Shown here: positions 5,898 to 60,292 of the stretch, one piece after another
Numbering within the stretch: position 1 is the stretch's first letter
How the letters are laid out: the number at the start of each line of letters is the position of its first letter
IMG/VR virus record: IMGVR_UViG_3300023184_004198
Span: 124,001-188,000 of that record
Length of the DNA stretch: 64,000 bases
Strand: one strand, 5' to 3'
Notes under the pieces: model-generated
The model's input: the letters and a program-made list of their open reading frames with translations, nothing else
What the model was told of the DNA's origin: nothing
Databases searched by the model: none
Position numbers and translations under genes: made by a program

Positions 5898-7007
5898 TTA
5901 TTTGCCGGTAAATTTCTTGATGTAGTTTTGTGTTTCCGCTGGCAATAAGTCTTTCCAGTGTCGTCCAGTTTCTTTTGCTTTCTGCAAAATCTTGTCAATA
6001 CGTCCAGGGCCGGCATTGTAAGCAGCCGCGGCCAATTCTGAATTTCCATACTTGTTTTTCATTGCCGCAAAATAATCTTTACCCACGCGATTAGATTCTT
6101 CAGCACCAGTGTTGGCAGCAGGCTTGACTCCGTAACCAGGATTGGTGTTTGTGGCCGGCATGACCTGTGCTGCAAATTTTGCACCCTTGGGCGACGTAAT
6201 GGGCCTACCATAATCATCATAATCTCTGTTGCCGCTTTCGATGCCACGTATGGTATCAAACTCACTGCTGGAGGTTTTTGTACCTGCTGGAAGTTTTGGT
6301 GCTTTGTTTGGTCTTGAACGCTCTGGTGATTTTTGTAATCGTTTTTGTCTTTCACGATCCTGCTTTTCCAGTTTGTCCAACAGTTCTTGGTCTTTGGCAA
6401 ATTTTTTGGGATCCATTTTGTAACCAGGAATAGGTTGATCTGCACCAATGCGTTTTTTAATATCAGCGTCATCAACTGGTGTGTCAGGTGGTGCATCATA
6501 CACAGGATCATGATAGTCGGGCTTTGTGGGTTTTGTTGCAGCCTTGGGTGCATCAGGCGGCGGAGTTGCGGATTTTAATCTAGGATCATCTTTCATTGTG
6601 GGATGACCACGTTTGACTTCTGGTGGACCAACTCTAGGAAGGTTTATCTCCGGTGGCTTGGTCACCGGAGATGTTACCACTGAAGTACTTCTTTTAGCAA
6701 TGCCACCTGGATCTTTGCTGGGACTAGGTGTTGGGGGTTTTACCTGAGGAGATGGAATAGGCGCAGGTGGTTCCGCTGTGGTAGATGAACCAGAATTTGG
6801 GATTTGCCCCTTTCTGATGTTTTGCGCAATACCACTCAATGTGTCGCCAGGCTTTACTGTATAAGTCGTGCCTTTGGGCAATACTATGCCATCACCTATG
6901 TCGAGCACCTGGCCGGGAAGTATCAAATCAGGATTTGCTAGGTTATTGCGAGCCGCAATGGTCCGCCAGTTGGCCACTGTGTCGTTGGTGAATTCTTTCA
7001 ATCTCAT
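5898..7007 (-). CDS. LysM + Pro-rich linker + soluble lytic transglycosylase
   Basis: YTVKPGDTLSGIA (LysM); IESG, AQVMPAT, AYNAGPG, ETQNY (SLT). Confidence 0.85.
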   Translation of the reverse strand: MRLKEFTNDTVANWRTIAARNNLANPDLILPGQVLDIGDGIVLPKGTTYTVKPGDTLSGIAQNIRKGQIPNSGSSTTAEPPAPIPSPQVKPPTPSPSKDPGGIAKRSTSVVTSPVTKPPEINLPRVGPPEVKRGHPTMKDDPRLKSATPPPDAPKAATKPTKPDYHDPVYDAPPDTPVDDADIKKRIGADQPIPGYKMDPKKFAKDQELLDKLEKQDRERQKRLQKSPERSRPNKAPKLPAGTKTSSSEFDTIRGIESGNRDYDDYGRPITSPKGAKFAAQVMPATNTNPGYGVKPAANTGAEESNRVGKDYFAAMKNKYGNSELAAAAYNAGPGRIDKILQKAKETGRHWKDLLPAETQNYIKKFTGK

Positions 7008-8194
7008 TATCGTTTCCTTTTTTCTCTACCTAATGTGCCCACATCAGTTTTAGGTTCATTTTTCTTTCTGGCGGCCTTGGCTCCAGGACCTGTGAGCCGC
7101 TTATCTGCTACTGCATCCAGATCATCTGTGTCTAGTTCGGCATCAGGTTCAATCTCATCGGCTTTTTTACGTTCCACAACATTGCCATCTTTGTCCACCA
7201 GGATAACATCTTTGGTGCCTTTTTTGCCAATGCCACGTGTGAGTGTAACACCCATGATTCTAATGCCAGGTAGGCCCAAGGCTGTGCTGTTGCGATTGCT
7301 GTCGTTGCGCAACAACCAAACCATGAGATGACTTTCAGGAATGTCTGCCTTGTTGGTAATCACAGCGTGTGCTTCGATAGTAACATCCTGACCAGTTTGT
7401 ACAAAATGCTCAGGCTTGAATGTTTGAATCACAATACCGCCCTTGGGGTTTAAATCACTGCCAAATATGGCATTCATGGCTTCTTCCTCAGTGGGCTCTA
7501 CCACAATTTCTTTGCTGAGCGCATACACTGGCTGGCCATTGCGTGTTTTTTCTAATTTTTGTAATCGAACTTGCTTGTCCTTGACCAGGTCGTCAATGAT
7601 GCCGCGAGCCTTTTTACCAAACAAGTTGTCGGCGCTTTCCCATGCTTCGGCATTGAGTTTCTTGATGCTTATGGGCAAACTGCGTTCAGGACTCTGCAAC
7701 ACTACATCAGCTTTTTTGCGCCCACCAGTATCACGTCCTGCTACATCCACTGAATTGCAATCGTTGATTGTGAGTGTTTTGCCACGTGGATCCACAAATG
7801 TCACATTCACACTGCCATAGCGATCAATCACACTCTGTAATAAACTGGCCATTTCGATTTCGTTGGCCACCCCTGCACTTTGATCGCCTTGAATACCAGA
7901 ATCTTTGACTAAAATTTTAACCGGGGTATCAGCAAATTCAATGCCACCGATACTGCTGAGTCTGGGATCCATGCTCAATGTGGGACGACTCCGGGGAAAA
8001 TTCTGTTTCATTAGCCCTAGAATTTCCCTTAAAATTGCTGATCTAAATTGATCTTTTTTCTCACCGTCGGGAATCTGTACCAACACACCAATTTTGTTGC
8101 CAGACACTTTGAGATCTGAATACCCAGATTTTTTTAGCACTGATTCGATGTCAGGTTTGCTCAAGTTTTCGATTAAATTGATCAAGTCGCGCAT
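7007..8194 (-). CDS. Putative PD-(D/E)XK nuclease-fold protein
   Basis: ANE...KKADVVL...ISIKK arrangement; late hexamer variant TAAGTA upstream. Confidence 0.5.
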
Positions 8195-8245
8195 TGGTTT
8201 TCCGTGAGAAGTATGTTATACTTATGCAACCAACAAGGAGACCGT

Positions 8246-8836
8246 GTGCCAAATTTAGTACCCATAGTTTTAGAAAACACCGCCAAGGGCGAACGCAGTT
8301 ATGACATTTACAGCCGCTTGCTCAAAGATCGTGTGATCATGCTGGACACAGAAGTTACAGAACATTCAGCCAGTTTAATCGTGGCGCAGTTGTTGTTTCT
8401 AGAAGCAGACAATCCTGACAAAGACATCAGTCTATATATTAACAGCCCTGGTGGCGTGGTCACAGCAGGCATGGCCATTTATGATACCATGCAGTTTATC
8501 AAACCCGACGTGCATACCATTGTGATGGGACAAGCCTGTAGTATGGGTTCATTGCTGGCACAAGCAGGTGCGCCGGGCAAGCGTTTTATGTTGCCCAATG
8601 CCAGACACATGATTCATCAACCGTCAGGTGGCGCACGTGGACAAGCCACAGACATGCTGATTCAAGTGGAAGAAATTCTTGCTATGAAACGGAACTTGAC
8701 CGGCATCTATGTCAAGCACAACTCAGCAGATCGAACCTTTGAAGAACTCACAGCCGACATGGAACGTGACAACTTTATGTCAGCACAACAAGCAGTTGAC
8801 TACGGCCTGGCTGACAAGATTGTGCAGAACCGTTAA
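8246..8836 (+). CDS. clpP: ATP-dependent Clp protease proteolytic subunit
   Basis: [31 protein letters not shown]; GTG start after AAGGAG. Confidence 0.95.
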
Positions 8837-9303
8837 GTGGGCCAGACCCAGCCCATGTTTTCAAGTTGATGTATCCATGAAAACACAGGTGCGTTGAACT
8901 GCAACTGCCATCGACCATTCCACCCCAGGTGTGTTTCCCCGGCTTGAACAGGATTCGGCTGGGGATTTTGCTGACTGTACCAGGGTTCAGGAAACACTGG
9001 CTCATAAGTGGCCAGCCAGTTGAAACGTGGCACATGTATGCTGTTGATTCTAATGGCACCAATGGTGATGTACTTGTCTAGCCCAAGGTGTGGTATGCAG
9101 TCTGAATCTTGTTTGTTCACAAAATCAACGATCACACTGTGTGGACCAGCAGTCAACAGTTGATCAAATCTCAAAGTAGTTGGCCGGCTTAGTTGCATGC
9201 GATCAACTGCATGATCAACGCCGTACATGATTTCAGGCACACTGCTGTGATATGTGGGCATGACATCTATTTCAATTTCAGTTTGATATTTTTTTGTATC
9301 CAT
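8833..9303 (-). CDS. Hypothetical protein coupled to the radical SAM gene
   Basis: Overlaps the 3' end of the radical SAM ORF; start at MDTKK. Confidence 0.65.
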
Positions 9304-10639
9304 ATTGTTCCAAGAAGTCAGTCCATTCTGGATAGTAGTCTCTGGCATCTAACTCGCAGTGGTGATCCCATTTGTTGAGCCAGCCAACCAGTTCTGTTTT
9401 GAGTGCTTCGGCATTGGGCAGTTCGGGCACTTGAATCATCTTGTACACACTGTTGAGTTCGTTGTACAGGTTAAGGGCATTCTTGCCATACTCTCTGCTT
9501 TGTGGCATGTCTGGATGTTGGTCTTGTTTGATATATGTACTCAATTTGTCAAGCACACGCTCGTATTCGGCAAAATAACTTTGTCTAATGTCCAAGGGCA
9601 ATGCGGCCGCCCGCAAATACGCAGGATTCCAGCAGGTGTTGTTTTCTGTGATGATGTTGCTGTCAAACATCCACTCCGTGAGTGCAGGAAATGTGGGCAC
9701 AGTGAGTGCAGTGATGGTGGGCTTCAAACACACGCAGAATGTTTCACTTTGATGCGACAAGAATGAACGGATGTTGTTCCAGTACAGTTCTTTGTCCAGA
9801 CCCTGGCGAATGTAAAAATTGTTATCTGACACAGACTCAATGCTGATGTCAATGTCTGCTCGGAAGAATCGAGCAAACTTTTCAGCAATCTCTCGACTGT
9901 ATATGGTGCCGTTGGAGATCAAACTCACAGCAAAGTCAGTGCGATCATGCTCAATAAAGAAATCCAAGAACTGTTCCAGTCTGGGACTCATAAAAGGCTC
10001 GCCGCCCATGAAGTGAACACTGCGCAGGTTCTTCATGCCCAGCAGTTCGTTCAGGAACCGTTGCCAAACTTCTTCATCATCCATCCAGTTCATTCTGGTA
10101 TGGTAGTCTTCTTTGCTGAGTATGCCCCAGATTTTGTATTTGGTTGCAATCTGTGTGCTGTAACTGGGGTTGCAATGTTTACAGTATAGGTTACATTCAT
10201 TGCCCATGTCAATATGCAGGTCCACAGGCATGCCATCGTAGTGCTCGTCCACGGCTTGACCAGATTGTTCACTGGTGAAAATATCATGGTGTGGGCTTTG
10301 TTCAAAACTTTGTTGAAAGTTTTGTTGGGTAAAGATAACACTGCGCCAATTGTGAGTGTTGCGATAACTGTCATTGCCATACTGTTCGTCTTGATAGCAG
10401 CCGGCACATTCAGCCAAAGGTTGGTCGCCCAGCATGGCAGCACGATAACGTTTCATTTTTTCACTGCGATACCACTCACGGATTGACGTGGTTTTGATAT
10501 TGGCTTTTACTTGTTCGGGTTGTTTGGCATAGCCATCGAACACAGGTGCTCGTTCACTGCAACACAGACCATAACTGCCGTCGTGGTAAAGTTGCATGTG
10601 GAACCAAGGCACATTACAGAATATTTTGGGATTTGGCAT
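9278..10639 (-). CDS. Radical SAM protein with N-terminal SPASM/Twitch-like domain
   Basis: CNLYCKHC, FMGGEP; N-terminal C..PW..CC..C..C; late hexamer 6 nt upstream. Confidence 0.9.
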   Translation of the reverse strand: MPNPKIFCNVPWFHMQLYHDGSYGLCCSERAPVFDGYAKQPEQVKANIKTTSIREWYRSEKMKRYRAAMLGDQPLAECAGCYQDEQYGNDSYRNTHNWRSVIFTQQNFQQSFEQSPHHDIFTSEQSGQAVDEHYDGMPVDLHIDMGNECNLYCKHCNPSYSTQIATKYKIWGILSKEDYHTRMNWMDDEEVWQRFLNELLGMKNLRSVHFMGGEPFMSPRLEQFLDFFIEHDRTDFAVSLISNGTIYSREIAEKFARFFRADIDISIESVSDNNFYIRQGLDKELYWNNIRSFLSHQSETFCVCLKPTITALTVPTFPALTEWMFDSNIITENNTCWNPAYLRAAALPLDIRQSYFAEYERVLDKLSTYIKQDQHPDMPQSREYGKNALNLYNELNSVYKMIQVPELPNAEALKTELVGWLNKWDHHCELDARDYYPEWTDFLEQYGYKKISN

Positions 10640-10676
10640 TGAAAATATTTAGTGTGCCCTGGATGAGTGTGTTATT

Positions 10677-10859
10677 TCACACAATGCTTTGGCGATGTTG
10701 ATCGTAATGATACTGACGTTCCCAATGTTCCACATCAGCGGCGCTTTGTGGGTTGCGGTTGGCAATGTACTGTTCCAGTCTGCTTTGATAGTCAGACCCT
10801 GGGAACATTTCCGCCAAGCGCTCTATTAGCCCTAGCATAAAATCTGATAAAATCTTCAT
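10677..10859 (-). CDS. Small hypothetical protein (DUF3563-like)
   Basis: LEQYIANRNPQSAADVEHWERQY pattern. Confidence 0.55.
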   Translation of the reverse strand: MKILSDFMLGLIERLAEMFPGSDYQSRLEQYIANRNPQSAADVEHWERQYHYDQHRQSIV

Positions 10860-11002
10860 TGTGTATTTTCCTCTGTATTTGCACTGATATTTATCTCTCA
10901 TGGTTTCTACTGAGTAATACTGAAGTGTTACACACTACCCACTTGACCGATAATTCACCAAATGTTATAATTGTGGCATACAAACAAACAAAGGAGTATT
11001 GT

Positions 11003-11227
11003 ATGAAGAATCTAAAAGTCAAAGCACTGGCCTTGTTGGCTGGTTGGATGGCCGCAGTGTTTGCAGGCGTAGCAGTGGTTCAATTGCTGGCGCACCAGTT
11101 TGGCAGTGAAATTGTAATGAACATGATTACAGGTGGCATCATGGCATGGTTGTTGTACATGGTGTATACTTTAATTTTAGCCAAATTGGAATGGGACTCC
11201 AAGGTTGATGAACTCAACAAAAAGTAA
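11003..11227 (+). CDS. Small two-TM membrane protein
   Basis: Early promoter near 10943, AAGGAG RBS, two hydrophobic segments. Confidence 0.7.
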   Translation: MKNLKVKALALLAGWMAAVFAGVAVVQLLAHQFGSEIVMNMITGGIMAWLLYMVYTLILAKLEWDSKVDELNKK

Positions 11228-11311
11228 TACTTGAGTATTACTAATTTGGTGGTTGACCAATAATTGCCAAAATGCTATAATATGGACATATTGTAACAAA
11301 AGGAGTTCGAA
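11223..11311 (+). repeat. Stem-loop + early promoter + RBS cassette, copy 1
   Basis: AGTAATAC-ttga-GTATTACT, then GTTGACCAATAATTGCCAAAATGCTATAATATGGACATATTGTAACAAAAGGAG. Confidence 0.9.
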
Positions 11312-11581
11312 ATGCGTAAACAGCGACTGATCCAAGGCTTGAACAACAGCCAAAAAATTCGTTTCATTGTTGACGGTGTTGGCATGTACTGTCGCATTTC
11401 GGACGTGGAAAATTTTGCTACTTACTCTGCCCAGCAGGCGGTGATCACAGCCCTGCAAAATCTGCAGGCTCAACGTGAACTGGCGTTTACCATGTGCAAG
11501 TCACAACCCACTGGCTGGGGCACCAACAGCATTTTTGCCGGCCGGCAACACAATGTTCAAGTTGATTTGCTCAAGGGCTAA
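11312..11581 (+). CDS. Hypothetical early protein
   Basis: Directly downstream of the cassette RBS. Confidence 0.75.
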   Translation: MRKQRLIQGLNNSQKIRFIVDGVGMYCRISDVENFATYSAQQAVITALQNLQAQRELAFTMCKSQPTGWGTNSIFAGRQHNVQVDLLKG

Positions 11582-11582
11582 T

Positions 11583-11753
11583 ATGAATTACAAAATCAAA
11601 CTCCAGCCACATCAAATTTGGCAACCTGAGAAACTGTACACTGTGCCCACTCTGGGCGTTCAGGTACAAGTTACCAACACCCCACAACTTGAACCCGAAC
11701 TCATGGACCTCTCCGAGGCTCGTGCAGTGTTAAAAAGGATCATGGCGCTATGA
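11583..11753 (+). CDS. Small hypothetical protein
   Basis: ATG 11583 in a tightly packed operon. Confidence 0.55.
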   Translation: MNYKIKLQPHQIWQPEKLYTVPTLGVQVQVTNTPQLEPELMDLSEARAVLKRIMAL

Positions 11754-12028
11754 TGCAAGATTTTTACTTTGAAAAGACTCGTGACAGTGTAGATGATGAC
11801 TGGCCTGAAAGTTTTTCTTCAGACGACCTTGCCAAAGCATTGAATGTGGACCGGGTAAGTTATAGGATCTACTATAGCAAGGACAATCTTACTTGCCGAC
11901 TGTTTGTGTTTCGTGCTCACTGTACACCTGCTGAAATGGACACAATGTTAGATATGGGCTTTGTGTTTGCACAAGATAATGATACAGAAAATATCCCTGA
12001 TAAACCTGTAGAGGAAATTGAAGAATGA
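11750..12028 (+). CDS. Acidic hypothetical protein
   Basis: ATGA overlaps at both ends. Confidence 0.65.
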   Translation: MMQDFYFEKTRDSVDDDWPESFSSDDLAKALNVDRVSYRIYYSKDNLTCRLFVFRAHCTPAEMDTMLDMGFVFAQDNDTENIPDKPVEEIEE

Positions 12029-12375
12029 AATGGTTTGCTGAAACTACAGAATGGGCTGGTGCCACAGCACCCAACCATGTGTACTTGTTAGACGACTCAA
12101 AGAGCAAGATGTTTGCCTATGTGAAGTTTGGCACGGGACTGCCTGAAAAATTCAGCAAACCCATTCGCATTGACATTCGTGGACGCAAGTTCAAATTGAA
12201 CCCTGTGCAGTTCAAAGTTGACGTTGAGGCCGAAGTACCAGAAGGACGTGTGATTGAGGTGCAAGGCAGCAAAGGCGACATTTATCGAGTAACCGAACTT
12301 GGCGGCAACTACTCATGCACTTGCTCGGGATTCAAGTTCCGCGGTGACTGCAAACACATCAAAGGCGTGCAATGA
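12025..12375 (+). CDS. SWIM zinc-finger protein
   Basis: C-terminal YSCTCSGFKFRGDCKH (CxC..CxH). Confidence 0.8.
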   Translation: MKWFAETTEWAGATAPNHVYLLDDSKSKMFAYVKFGTGLPEKFSKPIRIDIRGRKFKLNPVQFKVDVEAEVPEGRVIEVQGSKGDIYRVTELGGNYSCTCSGFKFRGDCKHIKGVQ

Positions 12376-12713
12376 TTGATTGGCGAAACCGAGACCTGCG
12401 TGACATAGGCATGGAACTGAGCTTGGAAACGCAACAAAGCATTGAGAGTTATTTGCTACGTGGTTGGGCTCCGGGCGGCTATGTTGAGAGCATGTTGGCA
12501 CACGACTACGAACGTGCGTTTGCCTGTGCTGATGTTGCCAACCGACAGACCATTTGGGTGCTATGGCGTTGGCTCAGAGACGATGCACCCCCACTGTGTC
12601 ATGGCAGTTATCAGGATATTGACCTGTGGCGTGATGACGTTGGTGGCCGCAGAACCGATTATGCCCGAAAGGTAGAACAAGCGGCAATTTGGCAAAAGTT
12701 GAGCACTGTATAA
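12372..12713 (+). CDS. Hypothetical protein
   Basis: Coupled ORF, 113 aa. Confidence 0.7.
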   Translation: MIDWRNRDLRDIGMELSLETQQSIESYLLRGWAPGGYVESMLAHDYERAFACADVANRQTIWVLWRWLRDDAPPLCHGSYQDIDLWRDDVGGRRTDYARKVEQAAIWQKLSTV

Positions 12714-12716
12714 CAA

Positions 12717-12745
12717 GAAAGCCCCTTGCGGGGCTTTCATTTTTT
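12717..12745. terminator. Bidirectional intrinsic terminator between convergent genes
   Basis: GAAAGCCCC-ttgc-GGGGCTTTC with flanking A/T runs. Confidence 0.85.
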
Positions 12746-13092: not shown

Positions 13093-13136
13093 AGTGGAAT
13101 GCTGTATGTGACAGCTATTTTTTAAAGGAACTTTTT

Positions 13137-32037: not shown

Positions 32038-33033
32038 ATGGCCGCAGAATTAACTATCAAATATGTTGTAGACTCTATTGAAGGCAATTCATTGAGTACC
32101 ACTGTCACTGGACCGGAACATGGTTGGGTAGAATATTGCAATCAACGAGGACAACTTGTTTATGCTGATGCGGTCAGTGAAGAGTTTTATAAAAAATGCC
32201 ACCAACAAGTCATTGAACTCATTACCAAACATGCCATAGAAGATAACAAAAAAAATCTTGGATTTATAAATCACATAAGCAACATACTAGTCAATGATGA
32301 TTTTGTATTTCCCATGTTCGGATCAGTGCCCAACGGCGGCAGTGAACTTGAAATTACCACGGGGGTTACAAGATTAATTGCCAGCATAATGAATGGTCGT
32401 ACCGCTCGAGAATTAAAGACTGTGGCATTTACACCTAAAGGACAATCAGCAACGCAATTAGAAAATTTAAAACCTTTGACCAGTACTGCTAATTTTGAAA
32501 AAATATACAATCTTGCAGATATTGATTACGAAATCAGCATGTCGGACTCCCCAGCTGGCGATATGAGTGAGTTTCGATTTGATCGAAGTGTGCTGAAATA
32601 TTCAATCTATGACAAAAAAGATCAGGCACTGCCACATACTCAAATAGGAGCAAACGTTTCAAATTTTTGGAGTAGACATATTAAAAAAGATAAAATTCAA
32701 TTGAACATAAGATGTACTCCTGAAGTAGAAAAATTAATTCAACCCAGTAAAATTTTTAACTGGAATGTAGTGCATGAAAAACACGAAGAATGGCAATGGA
32801 GTTATGGAAGAATTTTGGGTGCATATCGAAAAACAGAAGTACCTTTGTCCTTTGATGAGTCTCAAATTCATCTCTGGTTGTACGATGTGTCTGAACCTGT
32901 GTACTTGGAATTGTTATTGCCTTGGGTCACTGGACAATATACTTGTTGCCATACCAAAAATAAAAAAGCATTGTTTTTTGACACTTCCAGTGATGTGACC
33001 AGTATGCAAATTGTTGGAGACTGGGTCAAATAA
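32038..33033 (+). CDS. Hypothetical protein (AT-rich gene)
   Basis: 331-aa ORF, TAAGTA upstream; no family recognised. Confidence 0.7.
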
Positions 33034-33251
33034 TGGCCAAGGAAGAAACAATTAATATGGAAGGCAAGGTGCAAGAAATTCTACCCAATGCCATGTTTAG
33101 AGTATTGCTGGATGATGTCAACACAGAAGTTATAGGATACTTGTCGGGAAAAATGCGCACTCATAATATCAAGGTGTTGCTGGGTGATAGGGTTGCCATG
33201 GAATTTAGTCCTTACGATTTGACACGTGGGCGTATTACAAGAAGAAGATGA
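33033..33251 (+). CDS. infA: Translation initiation factor IF-1
   Basis: [44 protein letters not shown]. Confidence 0.95.
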
Positions 33252-33868: not shown

Positions 33869-33884
33869 CTAGATAAATATCTAC

Positions 33885-34433
33885 ATGGAACTGAGAGATC
33901 ACATTAACCTAGTAGAGGCCAGTACTAGACCGGCCAAGTTGGAAACCACTCCCTTGCCTTATGGTCCCAAAGACTTGGCACCGGTGATGAGTGCTGACAC
34001 AATTAATTATCATTTTGAACACTTGGCCAAGGGCTATGCAAAACGTTATAATGCTGGAGAAGGCAATGCAGATTTCAATCGTGCTGGCAGTTTTTTACAC
34101 AATAAGTTTTTCCCTCAGCTTCGCGCTCCCAAAGGTGCCAACAGACCCCGTGGTGCTGTACTTGCCTTGATTGAAGAGCATTTCAAAACCTACGAAGACT
34201 TCAAAGAGGCTGTTAAAGAAAAGGCCATGAAGATACAGGGTTCAGGTTGGGTGTATTTGAGCACTGGTGGTGAAATCAAAACCATTGCCAACCATGCTGT
34301 GCGCACAGATATCTGTGTGCTCATTGACTGGTGGGAACACGCCTGGGCATTGGATTATCAAAGCGACAAAGAACGCTATCTAGATAACATCTGGAAAATA
34401 ATAGATTGGGACGTCTGTAACGAACGTCTGTAA
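33885..34433 (+). CDS. sod: Fe/Mn superoxide dismutase with N-terminal extension
   Basis: LPY..LAPVMS..YHFEH, FLHNKFF, GSGW, DWWEHAW. Confidence 0.92.
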   Translation: MELRDHINLVEASTRPAKLETTPLPYGPKDLAPVMSADTINYHFEHLAKGYAKRYNAGEGNADFNRAGSFLHNKFFPQLRAPKGANRPRGAVLALIEEHFKTYEDFKEAVKEKAMKIQGSGWVYLSTGGEIKTIANHAVRTDICVLIDWWEHAWALDYQSDKERYLDNIWKIIDWDVCNERL

Positions 34434-53819: not shown

Positions 53820-54339
53820 AGGGTTGCAATATCGTGACCTAGAAGGCATGATGAAGCCTACCATTCATGTGGATGAATTTAGTGGCAAAATGGGCGATGA
53901 TGAGGATATCATTGTGTTGAGTTTCTTTGTGCGTGACAAACAAGCAGCCAAAGACCTAGTGGCCTGGTTTGAAAAAGGCTATGATTTTGTACTGGATGCT
54001 GACCGCAGCCCAGGTGAAATCAAACCCAGCCGCTATTTGGTGTATGTGGAAATGCGTCGCCGCAGTGCTGCACCACAGTATGTGGCCGAATTGATTAATG
54101 ATTTAACTACACTCACAGAACATGAACCTGAAGATTGGATAATGCGATATAATAATCAAACACAGCCTTGGAGTGAAGAAGCATTTGCAAGCACTGTGCC
54201 GCTGACTCCAGATGAGTATCGTAGAACACACGAATCAGATTTGAATGAGTGGCGCACTGCCGCTGGGTTGCCTGTAAAACAGATTCACGAAACCCGGCCT
54301 GACATGCGGGCACTACAGGCTGCTGCTGGACTTATCTAA
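53770..54339 (+). CDS. Conserved hypothetical late protein
   Basis: IHVDEFSGKMG..FEKGYDFVLDAD; start uncertain. Confidence 0.75.
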   Translation: MHNKTYNKTSNPSRLLEGLQYRDLEGMMKPTIHVDEFSGKMGDDEDIIVLSFFVRDKQAAKDLVAWFEKGYDFVLDADRSPGEIKPSRYLVYVEMRRRSAAPQYVAELINDLTTLTEHEPEDWIMRYNNQTQPWSEEAFASTVPLTPDEYRRTHESDLNEWRTAAGLPVKQIHETRPDMRALQAAAGLI

Positions 54340-54847
54340 TCCATTCACAGTAGATTCTATTGTTGCTGTCCTGCTGTAAATCAGCAACACGGAATCCAAA
54401 CTGGTCAGCATATTGATGCAACCGTTCAGGAGTCCAGTCAAAAAAATCAATAGACTTGCATTGTTCATTGCCGTGGTCTTGACGTCCAGGATTGCAACGC
54501 CAGTATATTCTAGCATGCGGAGTCAGCAATTGAACCACATGATCAATTTGCTTTAATATTGTTTCCTCACTACCAAAATTGATACTGCCCAGGCAAAATG
54601 CCACATTAAATTGTATATTGCTTTCAAACTCTTCAATGGTGCATTTGTAGTCAGCCTGATCAAACGCAGGATCTATGCCGGTTAGATTGGCAATGCGTCC
54701 TCGAAACGGATTGGTGCCGCAGCCTACATCCAGCACTGATTCGCCTAGTTTTATTTTTTGGAGAAGTGCCCATCCAGAATATTCATATTGATCAATGTTT
54801 GAGTGCCAATGAGTGCTGAAATATTTGTCTAAGGTGTGTTGGTCCAT
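54332..54847 (-). CDS. Class I SAM-dependent methyltransferase
   Basis: VLDVGCG, GIDP, GSINFG. Confidence 0.88.
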   Translation of the reverse strand: MDQHTLDKYFSTHWHSNIDQYEYSGWALLQKIKLGESVLDVGCGTNPFRGRIANLTGIDPAFDQADYKCTIEEFESNIQFNVAFCLGSINFGSEETILKQIDHVVQLLTPHARIYWRCNPGRQDHGNEQCKSIDFFDWTPERLHQYADQFGFRVADLQQDSNNRIYCEWIR

Positions 54848-54863
54848 ATAATTAATTATACAC
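54847..54863. promoter_or_regulatory. Palindromic bidirectional late-promoter candidate
   Basis: TATAATTAATTATA; TAATTA at 54853-54858 is 5 nt from both divergent ATGs. Confidence 0.6.
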
Positions 54864-55439
54864 ATGCTTCCCAACAGAATATTTCTAACAGGCGTGCCCG
54901 GCTCACGCTGGTCAGGTATTGCACAAACACTAGAAACCATTCCAGGTTTTAATACCACAGACCGCACACCAGCACGTACATACAGTCATCATAGTTACAC
55001 AGGACACCAAGGTGCTTACTTTGGTCCAGGTATGGAACTGGAATGTAGATTAAATGACCAGTATATTGATGCGGCCTGGACTGAGCCTGGTGGCACACGA
55101 TTGATTAAAAGTCATGACTGGGCATATGTGTTGCCTCAAGTACAACATTATTTTCCCAAAGACTGGATCATGTTGGTGTATCGTCCAGACATGGCGTCAT
55201 ATGCATGGTGGCACGAAGCAGGCGGGTTTCAAATCAAATACCCTTGCTATAATGCTTACCAGGACAGTACAGGCATGTTGGCAGCCATAACAAGACAGAA
55301 TCAGTGCATACTTGAATATGCACACAGTCGTAATGCCACTTGGCATCACTTTACACCTGAATGGGTTGAAAGTACATTTGGACATAAGGTTGAAATTAAG
55401 AAGACTTTTCCAGATATTTTAGTAACGGTGCTCAAATGA
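54864..55439 (+). CDS. Sulfotransferase-like P-loop protein
   Basis: IFLTGVPGSRWS, LIKSH, MLVYR. Confidence 0.5.
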   Translation: MLPNRIFLTGVPGSRWSGIAQTLETIPGFNTTDRTPARTYSHHSYTGHQGAYFGPGMELECRLNDQYIDAAWTEPGGTRLIKSHDWAYVLPQVQHYFPKDWIMLVYRPDMASYAWWHEAGGFQIKYPCYNAYQDSTGMLAAITRQNQCILEYAHSRNATWHHFTPEWVESTFGHKVEIKKTFPDILVTVLK

Positions 55440-55666
55440 GAGATCATGTTTGGTATATCAAATACGCCAGTGCCATAACCATATTATGTGCAATGGTGTT
55501 ACACGTTTTGGGCATCACGCCCTGGAACAGTTTTGTGCAAATGATCGGAGCCGCTGGCTGGATCTATGTGGGCTATCGCTGGAATGAGCGAGCTCTGATG
55601 TTGAATTTCTTGCCCCAGTTCTTCATTATTATCCCGGGGCTGGTGTACATGTATTTTTTGCGATGA
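55436..55666 (+). CDS. Small membrane protein
   Basis: Two to three TM segments. Confidence 0.7.
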   Translation: MRDHVWYIKYASAITILCAMVLHVLGITPWNSFVQMIGAAGWIYVGYRWNERALMLNFLPQFFIIIPGLVYMYFLR

Positions 55667-56064
55667 AACGCATACTGATCATGGGTTTGAGTGGTACAGG
55701 CAAGACCACACTGGCTAAGTCACTGCAAACCAAATTGAACTCTGTACATTTTAATGCAGATCAAGTTAGAGGTATGTTCAATGACTGGGACTTCAGTGCA
55801 GAAGGACGCATACGTCAAAGTCAACGCATGCGAGATCTTGCTGATGCAGCCCAGGCTGACTATGTGATTGCTGATTTTATTGCACCATTGAATCGCATGC
55901 GAGTAATATTTGACGCTGATTTTACCATATGGATGGACACTGTACAGCGCAGTCGGTTTGCAGACACTGACCAAATGTTTGTACCTCCTACTAGTTGGGA
56001 ATATGACATGAGGATCACCTCATTTGACTACAATATAGATAATATCTTAAAGGAACTACCATGA
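55663..56064 (+). CDS. Short adenylylsulfate kinase (CysC)-like protein
   Basis: GLSGTGKTT, NADQVR, DFIAP. Confidence 0.75.
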   Translation: MKRILIMGLSGTGKTTLAKSLQTKLNSVHFNADQVRGMFNDWDFSAEGRIRQSQRMRDLADAAQADYVIADFIAPLNRMRVIFDADFTIWMDTVQRSRFADTDQMFVPPTSWEYDMRITSFDYNIDNILKELP

Positions 56065-57026
56065 AACGATTACTCTTACTGTTATTAATGATTCCCATGA
56101 TGGCCCTGGCCTGGGAACCCAGCCGCCCAGTTACTGTGGTGATAGGCAATGCACCTGGTGCAGGCAATGAACTAGCATTTAGAAAACTGTCACAGATCAT
56201 CAATCGCACCAACAAAAAAATTACGTTTGTTGTTGAAAACCGTGCAGGCGCAGACAGCGTGATTGCAATGAATCACATGATGCAAGTATTGCCAGATGGG
56301 CATACCATTGCTGCTTTTAATCACATGAGCCAATATGTTACCCAGGACATTTGGCAGCGCGACATCAAAAAGTATGACTACAACACATTTGAGGATGTGC
56401 TTACCATAGGCAAAAGTCCCTTAGTGCTTGTTGCTATTTCCACCAGCGCAGTCAACACTCCAGATGAATTTGCTACACTGTTGCGTACCACACAACAACC
56501 CGTGTTTGTGGCTGTGGGGTCAGGCGCACATAGAATCACATTTGAGTATTTGATGCTGAAGACCGGGGGCAATAAAAACTTGGTTCGGCACATTGCTTTT
56601 AATGGGCCGGCACAGGCATTGCAAAGTGTTGCTAGTAGTGCAGGTGGCACAGAGTTTGGTATCATGCCCTTGACTGTGGCCCGTCCCTTGATCGAAGCAG
56701 GCCGGGTCAAAGCCATTGGCATCACTGGTGATCGAAAAATAGCGCAAATGCCAAATATCCCACTATTACGAAAGATCGCCCCGGGCATCAACATATTTGC
56801 TGCCTGGAACATTGTGTTGCCGCCACGCACTGATCGTGTGATTGTGGACTATTATGCGGATTTATTTGCTCGGGCTATAAATACTACAGAATACCAAGAA
56901 TGGATGGATCAAAACTTGGTATTTGTGGAAAGCCGAGAGTTAGATCCAGATGGTTTACGGCAACATGCCCAAGAACTACGCCGAACATTCCTACCCCTAG
57001 CAAACCAAATCAACCCCACCGAATAA
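56061..57026 (+). CDS. Tripartite tricarboxylate transporter substrate-binding protein (Bug/TctC)
   Basis: Signal peptide, P.RPVTVV..APG, VENRAGA, GRVKAIG. Confidence 0.88.
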   Translation: MKRLLLLLLMIPMMALAWEPSRPVTVVIGNAPGAGNELAFRKLSQIINRTNKKITFVVENRAGADSVIAMNHMMQVLPDGHTIAAFNHMSQYVTQDIWQRDIKKYDYNTFEDVLTIGKSPLVLVAISTSAVNTPDEFATLLRTTQQPVFVAVGSGAHRITFEYLMLKTGGNKNLVRHIAFNGPAQALQSVASSAGGTEFGIMPLTVARPLIEAGRVKAIGITGDRKIAQMPNIPLLRKIAPGINIFAAWNIVLPPRTDRVIVDYYADLFARAINTTEYQEWMDQNLVFVESRELDPDGLRQHAQELRRTFLPLANQINPTE

Positions 57027-57065
57027 CATAAATATTCGTGTATCGATACACTTAAGGAGAATTCC

Positions 57066-57761
57066 ATGGATGCAAAACAATTTGTTAAAAAACTAGTTGA
57101 GGACAATCAAGCATTGTTCAAGGCCAGCCAGTATAACGTTAAAGAATACTTCGACAGCAAACCTGCTCAAGAAGAATTAGTCGAGCACTTTGTTGGCCGC
57201 ATGGTCAACGAGCGCATGAACATGGTGGAAATTGCCAATGCAGTTGCTGCCATGCCTGCTGACACCCCAACAGAAGAACTAGAACTGTTGACACGTCAGG
57301 CACAAGACGAAGCCCGTCACTTCCGCATGGTCAAAGAAGTCATTGAGCACATGACTGGTCAGCCGCTAGACGTAGCCGCTGCCATCGCTGCTGAGGCTGC
57401 CAAACCCACTGCCAAAGGTGCTGGCTTGTTGGCCAAGTACGAAGCAGAAACTGATCCTGTTGCCCTGGCAGCATATCAGTTGGTTGCTGAAGGCCGCGCT
57501 GAGGCTGTATGGAACCAAATGGCTGACTGCATTGAAGACGAGTTCATCTCTACTAGTTACGCCAAGATTGCCAAAGACGAAGGTTTCCACGCCAACATTG
57601 GTGGTTGGAAACTGGAAAAATTGGTTCAAGACGAAGCCACACAACAACGTGTTGAAGTGTTGGTCGCTAAAATGCGCCGGGACTTGTATGACATTTCATG
57701 CCGGAACACCACTGCTGCTGCGGCAGGCAAGCAACTAGTGGCCGAAGCCTACGGTTGGTAA
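57066..57761 (+). CDS. Ferritin-like diiron protein
   Basis: E..DEARH and E..DEGFH; TAAATA and AAGGAG upstream. Confidence 0.85.
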   Translation: MDAKQFVKKLVEDNQALFKASQYNVKEYFDSKPAQEELVEHFVGRMVNERMNMVEIANAVAAMPADTPTEELELLTRQAQDEARHFRMVKEVIEHMTGQPLDVAAAIAAEAAKPTAKGAGLLAKYEAETDPVALAAYQLVAEGRAEAVWNQMADCIEDEFISTSYAKIAKDEGFHANIGGWKLEKLVQDEATQQRVEVLVAKMRRDLYDISCRNTTAAAAGKQLVAEAYGW

Positions 57762-58294
57762 TGAAGATAGGACTCACACAACGAGTCCTGTTTCACCAAG
57801 ATCGGGCGTATGATTCCTTGGAGCACTCGTGGTACGAGTTTTTGCAAGGACATACGCTCATTCCAATTGCAAACAGACTTCCTGTAAACATCACAGATCT
57901 AGACGCACTAATCATCACAGGTGGCGATGATCATGTCATACGCAACCAAGTAGAACATGAACTAGCAGATTGGATGTTTTTGCTCAATCTTCCTGTGTTA
58001 GGTATTTGTCATGGATGCCAATTCCTAACACAGAAACTGGGTGGCACAGTTGTGCCCGTTGACGATCACATGGACAGTTATCATGAAGTTGATTATCACG
58101 GTGAATCGCACCTGGTCAACAGTTATCATTCTCTGCGTATAGAACACCCACCCCCAGGCGCCACAGTGCTGGCACGTGACCCCGATGGCTATGTAGAATC
58201 CTGGATCCAGGGACGCACCGCTGGCATCATGTGGCATCCTGAGCGCATGTCACAACCTTGGATACCCCAAGAAATACAAAACTTACTAAATTGA
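57761..58294 (+). CDS. Class I glutamine amidotransferase-like (peptidase C26/PuuD-like)
   Basis: ITGGD, LGICHG, NSYH, WHPE. Confidence 0.9.
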   Translation: MKIGLTQRVLFHQDRAYDSLEHSWYEFLQGHTLIPIANRLPVNITDLDALIITGGDDHVIRNQVEHELADWMFLLNLPVLGICHGCQFLTQKLGGTVVPVDDHMDSYHEVDYHGESHLVNSYHSLRIEHPPPGATVLARDPDGYVESWIQGRTAGIMWHPERMSQPWIPQEIQNLLN

Positions 58295-59292
58295 ATCGAC
58301 TGGTTTATTATCCCACAGGCAGTTACGGTACATTTATGCAGTGGCTGTGCAATACTCCCAATATTTCTTCAGCAGAAGATTTACCATTCCATGTTGATGG
58401 CAACAGTCATCAATATGTGCTGAGTGATCAATTCAAATTATTAGTGTCAGATCAAGACACTGAAGAATTTGTTTTGACTAAAAATTCTACTGTGGTATCC
58501 TGTATTCCTCCAGTAGACCACAACAGCAAACTTTACAACAAACATGAACAACAAGATTTTTATTACCAGACCACTTTACAACACATAGAATATTTTGATA
58601 AACGATTGGTAAAAATATTGGTACTTTATCCAACTGAAACTAGTAAAATATGGTGGTGGCATAACAACTGCAAAAAAGTATTTTACACCGAAGAAATGTT
58701 TGATAGAAAAATCAAACATGCTCATCCTGATATCCCTTGGTTGACCACAATAGATCCTGTACAACGTGCTAGGGTGCAAATGAATTATTATCAAAGTCGT
58801 GCATGGTATCAAACATTGTTAGAAAATTTTAACTGCGTAAATGCACATCAACTCAGGCCTGGGCAACTGCGCACAGTGATGGCGCAAGCAATACATTACG
58901 AAACATTTGACAGTTTGAGTCATTGGGCGCAATTGCCCCCACAATTGCCCAATGTTAAATTTGTGTCTTTAGATCAACTACGAGATTGCACAAAGCAAAC
59001 AGTACAAAACATATTTGAATATTTCAAAGTGCAATCTAATTTGCCATTGGATTTTGTTTTGGATCAGTGGACTATGCGACAAACAACTCGCAATAGAGAC
59101 GTCGAACACAGTAAAATTATAAACTGCATAGTTAACAATCAAACCTGTGATTGGAGCAATTTGAATTTTGATTTGTTTGACGAAGTGTACCTTTATTATG
59201 CATTAAAATATCAACACAATATCTTATTAGACACAGACAGCATAGATTGTTTGCCAACCAACTCACAGGATCTACTGCGCCTGGCCCGCTAA
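58291..59292 (+). CDS. Hypothetical protein, possibly sulfotransferase-like (AT-rich)
   Basis: YYPTGSYGTF N-terminal loop; TTG start overlaps the upstream stop. Confidence 0.55.
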   Translation: MNRLVYYPTGSYGTFMQWLCNTPNISSAEDLPFHVDGNSHQYVLSDQFKLLVSDQDTEEFVLTKNSTVVSCIPPVDHNSKLYNKHEQQDFYYQTTLQHIEYFDKRLVKILVLYPTETSKIWWWHNNCKKVFYTEEMFDRKIKHAHPDIPWLTTIDPVQRARVQMNYYQSRAWYQTLLENFNCVNAHQLRPGQLRTVMAQAIHYETFDSLSHWAQLPPQLPNVKFVSLDQLRDCTKQTVQNIFEYFKVQSNLPLDFVLDQWTMRQTTRNRDVEHSKIINCIVNNQTCDWSNLNFDLFDEVYLYYALKYQHNILLDTDSIDCLPTNSQDLLRLAR

Positions 59293-59300
59293 ATAATCAC

Positions 59301-59759
59301 ATGTGGATTTTACACTTCTTACCGGACACACTCATACTTTGGATCTGCAACACGGTGTTGTTGGCAGGCATCTTGCTGACTGTGACAGCATTTTTTATCA
59401 AACGCATACCTGTCATAAACCAATACCGGATACCCGCACAAGTTCTGGGCATCGCACTGCTGGTGATAGGCGTATACTGGCGCGGTGGCTATGCTATCGA
59501 AATGGAATGGCGAGAACGTGTGGCCGAAGTAGAAGCCAAGGTAGCGGCTGCTGAAGCACAGAGCCGAGAAGCCAACACAAAAATTGTAACCAAAGTTGTT
59601 ACAAAAACACAGGTTATACGAACTCGTGGCGAAACTATCACCAAATACATTGACCGGGAAATTGTACAGTATGATACAAAGTTTGCCCCAGGTGGCCAGT
59701 GTGAAATACCACAAGAATTTATCAAAGCACACAACAGTGCAGCAGAGGCACCCAAATGA
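59301..59759 (+). CDS. Putative i-spanin (Rz-like)
   Basis: N-terminal TMs, coiled coil, C-terminal CEIPQEFIKAHN. Confidence 0.65.
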   Translation: MWILHFLPDTLILWICNTVLLAGILLTVTAFFIKRIPVINQYRIPAQVLGIALLVIGVYWRGGYAIEMEWRERVAEVEAKVAAAEAQSREANTKIVTKVVTKTQVIRTRGETITKYIDREIVQYDTKFAPGGQCEIPQEFIKAHNSAAEAPK

Positions 59760-60292
59760 AAATTAACGACATTATTACAGAAGCCAAATCGGCACATCCA
59801 CGACAGGCTGCAAAAGCCATAGCCATGAGAAATGCGGGCATAAAACCCAAGCACATGGGCGAGAGTGCAGAGTTGGCTGAAGAGTTTGATCTCATTGAAT
59901 CAATCATTGAACGCCTGGCCGAACACAACGGTGTGGATTCTGAAGTGATCTGGGAAGATTTAGAAACACTGTCAGAAGATGAACTGTATGTGTTTGCTGT
60001 GACATCAGAGCCCATCATGGAAAGTGAAGCCTGGCAAAAAGCCAACAACCGTGACAAAACAGATGGCATGAGTCGCAAAGCAGTGAAAACTTATCGCAGA
60101 GAACATCCAGGCAGTAAACTACAAACAGCAGTTACTACCAAGCCTAGTAAACTCAAGCGTGGTAGCAAGGCCAGCAAGCGTAGATCAAGTTATTGCAGTC
60201 GCAGTCGTGGACAGATGAAGATGCACAGCATTTCGTGTTCCAAGACTCCAGACAAAGCAATATGCAAAGCACGTCGTCGTTGGAACTGCTGA
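59756..60292 (+). CDS. Protein with acidic middle and basic Cys-containing C-terminal domain
   Basis: MKINDIITEA; C-terminal KRRSSYCSR...ARRRWNC. Confidence 0.75.
   Translation: MKINDIITEAKSAHPRQAAKAIAMRNAGIKPKHMGESAELAEEFDLIESIIERLAEHNGVDSEVIWEDLETLSEDELYVFAVTSEPIMESEAWQKANNRDKTDGMSRKAVKTYRREHPGSKLQTAVTTKPSKLKRGSKASKRRSSYCSRSRGQMKMHSISCSKTPDKAICKARRRWNC

What the first reader, a model, noticed from the sequence alone, without database searches (positions are those of the whole stretch)
5898..60292. Capsid-targeting-like N-termini on SOD, SLT, a nuclease and a lysis-region protein
Seen: late genes start MRLKEFT (7007, minus), MRDLINLIE (8194, minus), MELRDHINLVEA (SOD, 33885) and MKINDIITEA (59756). 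Known: T4 internal proteins carry a short N-terminal capsid-targeting sequence (MKTYQEFIAE type) cleaved after Glu. Inference: these proteins are packaged and injected; a virion-borne superoxide dismutase would be notable.
Basis: inference. Interest (0 to 1): 0.65.

Follow-up and report, generated by a model that had tools for sequence, protein, structure and literature searches.

The report
T4-like capsid-targeting leaders on phage enzymes
An uncultivated jumbo phage with a T4-type head puts a short leader resembling T4's capsid-targeting sequence on unrelated proteins, including a superoxide dismutase, so these are probably loaded into the capsid; no experiment on this phage shows it.

Summary
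They belong to a larger set: at least 13 genes of the 212.6-kb phage record start with the same kind of peptide (M-K/R-x-x-E/D-F/I-I/L-x-E, or ...I-N-L-I/V-E).

The peptide is far more frequent at gene starts than chance allows. It is conserved in orthologues while the residues after it vary. It sits on otherwise unrelated proteins and lies outside the folded domains.

The phage has a T4 gp23-type capsid protein. Nine of ten long related records encode a T4 gp21-type (S77) prohead protease; this contig breaks off just where that gene should be. Most leaders end in [L/I]-x-Glu, like known T4 cleavage sites (IAE-10, ITE-6).

In the cultured relative PA5oct, genes with this leader are enriched among virion mass-spectrometry hits. 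Its SOD homologue, which carries a similar extension, is among those hits.

So the capsid-targeting reading is well supported but indirect. Cleavage and injection are untested. The "nuclease" label is not supported. The SLT leader lacks the downstream Glu.

I class it as a new member of a known kind: the T4 capsid-targeting sequence with new cargo.

The parts
33885..34433 (+). Fe/Mn superoxide dismutase gene (182 aa) with an 18-residue N-terminal extension
   Evidence: Pfam Sod_Fe_C at 77 bits; Sod_Fe_N at 24.9 bits, below its cut-off of 27. PDB SODs align from residue 19-21 onward. The AF2 model matches Fe/Mn SODs only. Metal ligands H43, H72, D148 and H152 are invariant in 16 orthologues.
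33885..33917 (+). SOD leader MELRDHINLVE; proposed cleavage after Glu11 (LVE|A)
   Evidence: In 80 orthologues the first residues vary in length and sequence, but [ILV]x[LIMF][VIL]-E-A-S/N/T-T-R/K-P-A-K-L-E-T-T is conserved. pLDDT is below 50 for residues 7-15.
33873..33879 (+). ATAAATA element 5 nt upstream of the SOD ATG (resembles the T4 late promoter)
   Evidence: TAAATA lies 4-5 nt before the ATG in 71 of 80 orthologues, amid variable flanks. The same element precedes sheath, tube and fibre genes in this genome.
7007..8194 (-). 395-aa protein (phrog_12709): leader, then Pol-beta-NTase-like N-domain, then a middle domain with a D163...S176-I-K178 motif
   Evidence: There is no Pfam or PDB sequence hit.
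8168..8194 (-). Leader MRDLINLIE; proposed cleavage after Glu9 (LIE|N)
   Evidence: Relatives start MRELINILTE|T, MRYNEFSRHLVE|S or MTTDIRNILNVLE|A. A linker of variable length follows, then the conserved domain. pLDDT is below 50 for residues 1-9.
5898..7007 (-). LysM + SLT lytic transglycosylase gene (369 aa)
   Evidence: Pfam LysM at 39.8 bits and SLT at 31.3 bits, both over their cut-offs. PHROG hits to virion structural and internal virion proteins with an endolysin domain.
6984..7007 (-). Leader MRLKEFTN directly before the first LysM; no Glu at the canonical cleavage position
   Evidence: MRL[KRNSD]EF is nearly invariant in about 110 of 120 homologues of 37-98% identity.
59756..60292 (+). 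178-aa modular protein with a C-terminal DUF6321, lying between a spanin-like gene and an endolysin
   Evidence: Pfam DUF6321 at 34 bits. Neighbours: 59247-59759 (phrog_2536, Rz-like spanin) and 60563-61177 (phrog_181, endolysin).
59756..59782 (+). Leader MKINDIITE; proposed cleavage after Glu9 (ITE|A)
   Evidence: 59 of 71 related loci start with M[KR]xx[ED][FI][ILV]xE, including MKTYNQFIAE. The leader is fused to shuffled downstream modules. PA5oct virion protein gp150 starts MKINDIITEG.

Best explanation
The four N-termini, and at least nine more in the same genome, are capsid-targeting leaders of the T4 type. Each is a roughly 8-12-residue amphipathic peptide (M, basic, x, x, acidic, F/I/L, I/L/V, x, Glu).

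Proposed mechanism: during late infection the leader directs the attached protein into the scaffolding core of the assembling T4-type prohead. For most cargoes the S77 (gp21-type) prohead protease then removes it by cutting after the Glu of an [L/I]-x-E site.

The cargo stays in the head with the DNA. It comprises a probably active Fe/Mn SOD, a LysM-SLT murein hydrolase, an NTase-fold protein and small mosaic basic proteins.

Shown here:
- the motif, its excess at gene starts, its conservation and its modularity;
- that it lies outside the folded domains;
- T4-type head genes in the lineage;
- enrichment of such leaders among virion mass-spectrometry hits in one relative.

Inferred: binding to the core, cleavage, copy number, and delivery into the host.
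For: 1. Similarity to T4. The T4 CTS is MKTYQEFIAE, cut once next to it (PMC8442874). T4 Alt loses six residues at ITE-6 (PMC5694885). Here the leaders read ...EFITE, EFINE, DIITE, INLIE, INLVE. Family members include MKTYNQFIAE, which matches T4 at 8 of 10 positions.
2. Head genes. There is a T4-type capsid protein (PF07068, 323 bits). Peptidase_S77 scores over its cut-off in 9 of 10 long related records. The gene order portal, protease, scaffold, capsid in relatives puts the missing protease just beyond the contig end.
3. Excess at gene starts.
4. Modularity. The leader-bearing proteins are mutually unrelated except one pair. The same leader is fused to shuffled modules. The same module occurs without a leader in cyanophage S-SRM01. 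The same SOD occurs without the extension in Vibrio phage 2.275.O. This mirrors T-even internal proteins, which share only the CTS (PMC3012670).
5. Conservation in orthologues, with synonymous codon variation under the peptide.
6. Low model confidence for the leaders.
7. PA5oct. 8 of 13 motif ORFs are virion MS-positive against a 21% base rate (Fisher p = 0.0017). With a regex derived from this genome alone the count is 6 of 11 (p = 0.015). The SOD homologue gp261 (MNDSIKKYISIAE|A) is MS-positive. gp150 lies between the portal and protease genes and starts MKINDIITEG.
8. The SOD has a late-promoter-like element shared with structural genes.
Against: - There are no proteomic, cleavage or expression data for this uncultivated phage.
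- The S77 protease is absent from the record itself. This is explained by truncation but not proven.
- The regexes were defined after seeing the data.
- The PA5oct mass-spectrometry list includes RNR, thymidylate synthase, ClpP, FtsH and ligase, so presence there is not proof of packaging.
- The SLT leader, and the g86269 leader outside the window, lack the canonical downstream Glu.
- A folded SOD dimer would have to unfold to pass through a tail tube, so 'injected' is doubtful for it.
- The SOD sits among non-structural genes (an IF-1 homologue lies nearby). In PA5oct and the Vibrio phage it lies in a ClpS/heat-shock module.
Confidence: 0.6

Rival explanations
1. The leader targets proteins to the virion but does not work as a cleaved T4-style head CTS. 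It could be an uncleaved anchor to core, portal or tail components, or be cut at another site. The cargo would then be structural or assembly-related rather than free internal or ejected protein.
For: - The SLT leader has no downstream Glu.
- g36763 and g37628 lie in the neck/tail gene block.
- PHROG hits of the SLT domain include tail-associated lysins.
- The PA5oct data show virion association only, not location or processing.
Against: - Most leaders end in [L/I]-x-E followed by a small residue, and that Glu is invariant in SOD orthologues.
- The leaders closely resemble T4's head-specific CTS.
- PA5oct gp150, which has the same leader, is encoded between the portal and prohead protease genes.
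Confidence: 0.17
2. The N-terminal peptide is a recognition tag for the phage's own Clp machinery or another intracellular regulator. It would be a degron or adaptor signal and unrelated to the capsid.
For: - The phage lineage encodes ClpX, ClpA-like, ClpS and two ClpP proteins.
- The SLT gene and its 395-aa neighbour lie between the two clpP genes.
- In PA5oct the SOD gene follows clpS.
- Cutting after the first Glu of M-R-L-x-E|F would expose an N-end-rule residue. This last point is my inference.
Against: - Motif proteins accumulate in PA5oct virion preparations rather than disappearing.
- From my own knowledge (Flynn et al. 2003), the motif does not fit published ClpX N-motifs.
- The space between the two clpP genes is a variable slot in relatives that lack these two genes.
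- This reading does not explain the resemblance to the T4 CTS.
Confidence: 0.08
3. The resemblance reflects selection on translation initiation (A/T-rich early codons of highly expressed late genes) or chance, with no protein-level function.
For: - Lys (AAA), Arg (AGA), Ile, Asn, Glu (GAA) and Phe (TTT) codons dominate the leader.
- The SOD mRNA may be leaderless, which could put special constraints on its first codons.
Against: - The most abundant late proteins (capsid, sheath, tube, fibres) lack the motif.
- Synonymous codons vary under conserved residues.
- The SOD extension of 18 residues is kept in 80 orthologues, with an invariant E-A-S-T-x-P-A-K-L-E-T-T segment beyond the first codons.
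- The excess is 40-fold or more over background.
Confidence: 0.04

Closest known systems
[quoted passage not shown]
   Same: - A roughly 10-residue N-terminal leader with an E-F-I-x-E core ending in [I/L]-x-Glu.
- It is attached to otherwise unrelated, fast-evolving proteins.
- The phage has a gp23-type capsid and a gp21-type protease.
   Different: - The leaders here are usually one residue shorter (MRAxEFIxE) or belong to an ...INL[IV]E subtype.
- The cargo includes recognisable enzymes (Fe/Mn SOD, LysM-SLT, NTase-fold protein), not only small basic proteins.
- The host phage is an uncultivated jumbo phage of about 345 kb.
- Packaging and cleavage are not shown.
T4 Alt (ADP-ribosyltransferase), packaged and processed at ITE-6 (PMC5694885)
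   Same: A large enzyme cargo with a very short N-terminal propeptide ending in I-T-E. This matches DIITE and EFITE here.
   Different: Alt is also processed at its C-terminus and is known to be injected. Neither is known for these proteins.
Long N-terminal propeptides of phiKZ and SPN3US ejection proteins (PMC5694885, PMC10052503)
   Same: These are jumbo-phage head proteins targeted by N-terminal propeptides that a gp21-related protease removes after Glu.
   Different: Those propeptides are 80-130 residues long. They are cut at A/S/G-x-E by an S80 protease, in phages without a recognisable gp22-type scaffold.
PA5oct gp261 (EST35_0261), annotated as hypothetical and flagged ESI-MS/MS (MK797984)
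   Same: It is 37% identical to the window SOD and carries an N-terminal extension ending I-A-E|A. The phage has a T4-type head module.
   Different: It is a cultured Pseudomonas phage. The leader sequence differs, and the published paper does not mention a SOD.
Capsid-internal murein hydrolases such as T7 gp16, and virion-packaged Cu,Zn-SODs of giant eukaryotic viruses (both cited from my own knowledge, not checked here)
   Same: The idea is the same: a virion carries a lytic transglycosylase or a SOD into the next infection.
   Different: The virus lineages, targeting mechanisms and SOD family (Cu,Zn versus Fe/Mn) all differ.

Membership tests
T4-type CTS-bearing head-internal proteins | The phage builds a T4-type (gp23) capsid | tested here: met
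   PF07068 at 323 bits, genome 216-1184. About 65% identity to the capsid proteins of PA5oct and Vibrio phage 2.275.O.
T4-type CTS-bearing head-internal proteins | The phage encodes a gp21-type (Peptidase_S77) prohead protease | tested here: inconclusive
   Not found in this 61%-complete record. The contig starts at the capsid gene, and in relatives the protease lies two genes upstream of it. It was found over the cut-off in 9 of 10 long related records.
T4-type CTS-bearing head-internal proteins | An N-terminal peptide of about 6-12 residues resembling MKTYQEFIAE and ending in [L/I]-x-Glu | tested here: met
   Met for three of the four: LIE-9, LVE-11 and ITE-9. Not met for the SLT protein (MRLKEFTND), unless it is cut at LKE-5.
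T4-type CTS-bearing head-internal proteins | The leader is shared by otherwise unrelated cargo and is separable from the cargo domain | tested here: met
T4-type CTS-bearing head-internal proteins | The protein is physically present inside purified capsids | not testable with these tools
   Only indirect evidence: leader-bearing ORFs, and the SOD homologue, are enriched in the PA5oct virion mass-spectrometry list.
T4-type CTS-bearing head-internal proteins | The leader is removed by cleavage after Glu during head maturation | not testable with these tools
   The PA5oct supplementary peptide tables are not held in the paper library.
Fe/Mn superoxide dismutase | Both Pfam domains (Sod_Fe_N and Sod_Fe_C) | tested here: inconclusive
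   Sod_Fe_C at 77.3 bits, over its cut-off. Sod_Fe_N at 24.9 bits, below its cut-off of 27. The helical hairpin is roughly 20 residues shorter than in solved SODs.
Fe/Mn superoxide dismutase | Four metal ligands (His, His, Asp, His) and the SOD fold | tested here: met
   H43, H72, D148 and H152 are aligned to the ligand positions and invariant. All top Foldseek hits are Fe/Mn SODs, at E about 4e-9 and TM about 0.55, from a model with mean pLDDT 71.
Fe/Mn superoxide dismutase | Catalytic activity | not testable with these tools
   Needs an enzyme assay.
SLT lytic transglycosylase | SLT domain over the Pfam cut-off | tested here: met
   PF01464 at 31.3 bits against a cut-off of 21.3, residues 271-347. 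A G-I-E-S-G segment at 256-260 is kept in the L251 homologue. Its role as the catalytic Glu-Ser motif is my inference.
   There is no Pfam or PDB sequence hit. Residues 11-102 resemble Pol-beta-type nucleotidyltransferases at Z 7-9. The middle domain has invariant D163...S176-I-K178. One weak atlas lead points to R.HinP1I-like clusters (score 0.92).

The most novel reading that the evidence does not exclude
A widespread clade of uncultivated jumbo phages of about 345 kb uses a T4-like capsid-targeting leader as a general address label. It would load a changing set of enzymes into the head, among them an active Fe/Mn superoxide dismutase. The virion would then carry its own antioxidant, either to protect packaged DNA in the particle or to act at the start of infection. 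As far as I know this would be the first virion-borne SOD in a phage, and a natural counterpart of engineered T4 protein delivery.
Probability: 0.45. Interest if true: 0.72.

Novelty: new member of a known kind. Interest (0 to 1): 0.58.

Why it matters
If the leader is a working capsid-targeting sequence, several things follow:
- The T4 targeting mechanism would extend from T-even phages to a distant and abundant group of jumbo phages. The SOD alone has 260 relatives in IMG/VR, and the DUF6321 family has about 600 related loci.
- Head-internal or ejected proteins could be predicted from sequence alone in uncultivated phages.
- A superoxide dismutase would be identified as virion cargo. The PA5oct virion proteome already lists such a protein, but that paper never mentions a SOD.
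- Natural leader variants would be available for protein-packaging applications.

Tried and rejected
- Near-identity DNA search of the phage collection found nothing.
- Peptidase_S77 is not in the window's own record. I put this down to contig truncation rather than true absence.
- BLAST of the leader proteins against PA5oct found only the SOD and three non-leader neighbours.
- The SLT gene and its 395-aa neighbour have no orthologue in three complete relatives.
- A first loose regex ([DENQ]-hydrophobic-x-x-E anywhere in residues 3-13) was uninformative in PA5oct and was replaced.
- PDB sequence search and Foldseek gave nothing for the 395-aa protein. Only VIA-align gave mid-range NTase-fold matches.
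- The PA5oct supplementary tables are not held. The MIJ3 proteome covers only four gel bands.
- The held paper library has nothing on a capsid-targeting sequence in PA5oct- or RaK2-like phages.
- A Sec or Tat signal peptide is rejected, because the leader has no hydrophobic core.
- Complex prediction was not used. The leader is shorter than the 30-residue minimum, and the binding partner in the core is unknown.
- One family scan failed on a bad coordinate and was dropped.
Full report
**1. What the window is**

The window is bases 124,001-188,000 of a 212,614-bp IMG/VR virus record that CheckV rates 61% complete. The record starts with a T4 gp23-type major capsid protein (PF07068, 323 bits).

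Its nearest cultured relatives, at about 65% capsid-protein identity, are Vibrio phage 2.275.O (349 kb) and Pseudomonas phage PA5oct (287 kb, Arenbergviridae). CBB-, BF- and RaK2-like jumbo phages follow. IMG/VR holds hundreds of closer relatives, including complete genomes of 342-364 kb with terminal repeats.

**2. The observation**

- 5898-7007(-): MRLKEFTND, LysM + SLT.
- 7007-8194(-): [10 protein letters not shown], phrog_12709, no Pfam family.
- 33885-34433(+): MELRDHINLVEA, Fe/Mn SOD.
- 59756-60292(+): MKINDIITEA, C-terminal DUF6321.

A crude gene call of the whole record shows the four are part of a larger set. The others, in genome coordinates, are:
- MRAQEFVTE (36763)
- MRAREFITE (37628)
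- MKLNELATP (86269)
- MRIDEVESE (87210)
- MRNYINLIEA (201203)
- MKYREILEA (202217)
- MIIDELFEA (202567)
- MRAQEFINEA (204075)
- MRAREFIREL (204905)

Apart from one weak pair (36763 and 37628), these proteins share nothing beyond the first residues.

**3. More than chance**

- ^M[KRH]xx[ED][FILVM] occurs at 9 gene starts against 1.1 expected from its frequency inside proteins.
- The stricter nine-residue pattern occurs at 5 first ATGs against 0.11 expected. Three complete relatives give 6/0.19, 4/0.18 and 2/0.15.
- I wrote these patterns after seeing the sequences, so the p-values are optimistic. The excess is 40-fold or more and recurs in independent genomes.
- The abundant late proteins (capsid, sheath, tube, fibres) start MS.../MA... 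and lack the motif.

**4. Conservation and modularity**

*SOD.* In 80 orthologues of 84-93% identity, the extreme N-terminus varies in length and sequence (MELRDHINLVE, MREQIDLIE, MRKEINLIE, MDTAASIYDFINIVE and others). The segment hydrophobic-x-hydrophobic-hydrophobic-E-A-S/N/T-T-R/K-P-A-K-L-E-T-T is nevertheless conserved.

*The 395-aa protein.* Relatives begin MRELINILTE|T, MRYNEFSRHLVE|S or MTTDIRNILNVLE|A. A linker of variable length follows, and then the conserved domain.

*The SLT protein.* MRL[KRNSD]EF is nearly invariant in about 110 of 120 homologues of 37-98% identity, and it directly precedes the first LysM.

*The DUF6321 protein.*
- 59 of 71 related loci begin with the nine-residue motif (MRAIEFLTE, MKANEFITE, MKINEIITE and others). 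The set includes MKTYNQFIAE and MKTYKQFVTE.
- The leader is fused to a mosaic of shuffled small modules.
- One of the six scan patterns used to find these loci was the leader itself. However, most hits have different leaders and matched through the C-terminal part.

*Further points.*
- Orthologues of the out-of-window leader genes keep the motif in three complete relatives.
- Codons vary synonymously under the conserved residues.
- The same module occurs without a leader in cyanophage S-SRM01: MGWSEKYKKSIDC... against MKANEFITE-KWSQKYKSSINC....
- The Vibrio phage SOD has no N-terminal extension.
- AF2 models give pLDDT below 50 for residues 1-9 of the 395-aa protein and 7-15 of the SOD.

Together these results describe a short, separable, protein-level address tag.

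**5. Why a capsid-targeting tag**

- The T4 CTS is MKTYQEFIAE. It is cut once next to the sequence, and it carries any fused protein into the head (PMC8442874; PMC5694885).
- T4 Alt loses six residues at ITE-6.
- T-even internal proteins are diverse and share only the CTS (PMC3012670).
- The leaders here share the E-F-I-x-E core. Three of the four in the window, and most of those outside it, end in [L/I]-x-Glu followed by a small or polar residue: LIE-9, LVE-11, ITE-9, INE-9, ILE-8 and LFE-8.
- The lineage has the matching machinery. Peptidase_S77 scores over its cut-off in 4 of 5 and 5 of 5 long related records.
- In relatives the gene order is portal, small ORFs, protease, scaffold, capsid. 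This places the missing protease just left of this contig's first gene, and explains why one search did not find it.

**6. Indirect experimental support**

The PA5oct GenBank record flags the 93 proteins found by ESI-MS/MS of virions (PMC7318152).
- Of 13 PA5oct ORFs with the leader pattern, 8 are flagged, against a base rate of 90 in 419 (odds ratio 6.3, Fisher p = 0.0017).
- With a pattern derived only from the window's genome the count is 6 of 11 (p = 0.015).
- One of them is gp150, a 73-aa protein encoded between the portal and protease genes. From my knowledge of the T4 map, that is where T4 has the core protein gp67. It starts MKINDIITEG, the same leader as the window's DUF6321 protein.
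- The PA5oct SOD homologue gp261 is 37% identical, is annotated as hypothetical, and starts MNDSIKKYISIAE|A. It is also flagged. The paper never mentions superoxide.

Caveat: the list also contains RNR, thymidylate synthase, GTP cyclohydrolase, FtsH, ligase, ClpP and MazG. Presence in the list is therefore suggestive only. None of those likely contaminants starts with the leader.

**7. The cargo**

*SOD.*
- The SOD domain aligns to solved Fe/Mn SODs from residue 19-21 onward.
- The four metal ligands H43, H72, D148 and H152 are invariant.
- The AF2 model matches only Fe/Mn SODs.
- The N-terminal hairpin is about 20 residues shorter than usual, and Sod_Fe_N falls just under its Pfam cut-off.
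- In 71 of 80 orthologues a TAAATA element (usually [A/G]ATAAATA) lies 4-5 nt before the ATG. The same element stands 17-26 nt upstream of the sheath, tube and fibre genes.
- By analogy with the T4 late promoter TATAAATA (my knowledge), the SOD is a late gene, possibly with a leaderless mRNA.

*The 395-aa protein.* It is not demonstrably a nuclease.
- Residues 11-102 resemble Pol-beta-type nucleotidyltransferases (GLD-2, TUTases, CD-NTases) at Z 7-9.
- The middle domain has an invariant D...S-I-K motif.
- Only one weak atlas lead points to HinP1I-like proteins.

*The SLT protein.* It carries a conserved G-I-E-S-G segment.

*The DUF6321 protein.* It lies between a spanin-like gene and an endolysin, but it has no membrane segment. 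In the relative G003 its orthologue sits in a cluster of other leader genes.

**8. Mechanism, rivals and limits**

The most likely mechanism, at confidence about 0.6, has three steps:
- The leader binds the prohead core.
- The S77 protease removes it after Glu.
- The cargo stays with the DNA.

Not shown: binding, cleavage, copy number and delivery into the host.

The SLT leader has no downstream Glu, so it may be uncleaved or cut at LKE-5. A SOD dimer is an unlikely passenger through a tail tube, so it may act inside the particle rather than be injected.

The rivals are:
- virion targeting without T4-style cleavage or head location;
- a tag for the phage's Clp system, suggested because the SLT gene and its neighbour lie between two clpP genes;
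- selection on translation initiation.

**9. Novelty**

The mechanism is the known T4 CTS. What is new:
- its apparent use in a distant, abundant clade of uncultivated jumbo phages;
- its attachment to recognisable enzymes, above all a Fe/Mn SOD;
- the observation that a cultured relative's virion proteome already contains that SOD, unremarked.

I found no paper in the held library that describes this.

Noticed in passing
window 5323-5895 (+) and 8204-8836 (+): Two clpP paralogues (PF00574, 93 and 265 bits) flank the minus-strand SLT gene and its 395-aa neighbour. In relatives G002 and G003 the two clpP genes lie 1.6-3.4 kb apart with other content between them and lack these two genes. The space between them is therefore a variable slot.
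   Followed up: partly
window 33873-33884, and 30 nt upstream of the SOD start in L013-L092: TAAATA (usually [A/G]ATAAATA) lies 4-5 nt before the SOD ATG in 71 of 80 orthologues. This implies a T4-late-type promoter and a leaderless or nearly leaderless mRNA. The same element lies 17-26 nt upstream of the sheath, tube and fibre genes, where a GGAG-like ribosome-binding site follows it.
   Followed up: partly
window 33033-33251 (+): A phage-encoded translation initiation factor IF-1 homologue (PF01176, 76 bits), two genes upstream of the SOD.
   Followed up: no
outside the window: G000 genome 195757-200673 (window scale 71757-76673): A 1638-aa protein that starts MNINELDSY. It has a GS...DID nucleotidyltransferase-like motif and an HELVH metalloprotease-like motif. 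It heads a cluster of five leader-bearing genes (201203-205546). It may be a polyvalent ejected protein.
   Followed up: no
L008:32921-33142 (PA5oct gp150) and G003 203301-203522: A 73-aa ORF lies between the portal and prohead protease genes. It starts MKINDIITEG in PA5oct, where it is virion MS-positive, and MILNELYQRE in G003. It is possibly the counterpart of a T4 prohead core protein and may be the model for the cargo leaders.
   Followed up: partly
L171-L250 (relatives of the DUF6321 protein): Downstream of the leader these proteins are mosaics of a few small modules in varying order and number. The modules are KWSQKYKSSINCSHPKGFSQKAHCAGKKK, CWxGxxKxGTxxKGGxxVxNCVP, AAQQAAIAxxMKK, EEFDxIE...HGVD..IWEDLE and DUF6321. 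DUF6321 also occurs in T4-like cyanophages and in pelagiphages.
   Followed up: partly
window 9278-10639 (-) and many places in G000, G002-G004: There is a large family of radical-SAM/SPASM paralogues, with a dozen or more tblastn matches per genome in G003.
   Followed up: no
window 7007-8194 (-), residues 11-102: The N-domain of the 395-aa protein resembles the Pol-beta nucleotidyltransferase fold (CD-NTase, TUTase, OAS) at Z 7-9, but only one Asp (D98) stands where the catalytic pair is expected. It may be an inactive or divergent NTase.
   Followed up: partly
window 4041-4619 and 4680-5276 (+): Two predicted secreted or lipoprotein genes (MRQTILMKRLLALALIPATVLA... and MKKVLAIVPLVALVACSS...) lie next to the clpP-like gene. 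They are conserved in G002, G004 and L251.
   Followed up: no
L005:1468-2037 (Vibrio phage 2.275.O SOD): This SOD has no N-terminal extension. Instead it has a C-terminal tail of about 25 residues (...SKNHKMLDESVNIRHLINFISK) that contains an I-R-H-L-I-N-F motif reminiscent of the INL[IV] leaders. Its meaning is unknown.
   Followed up: no
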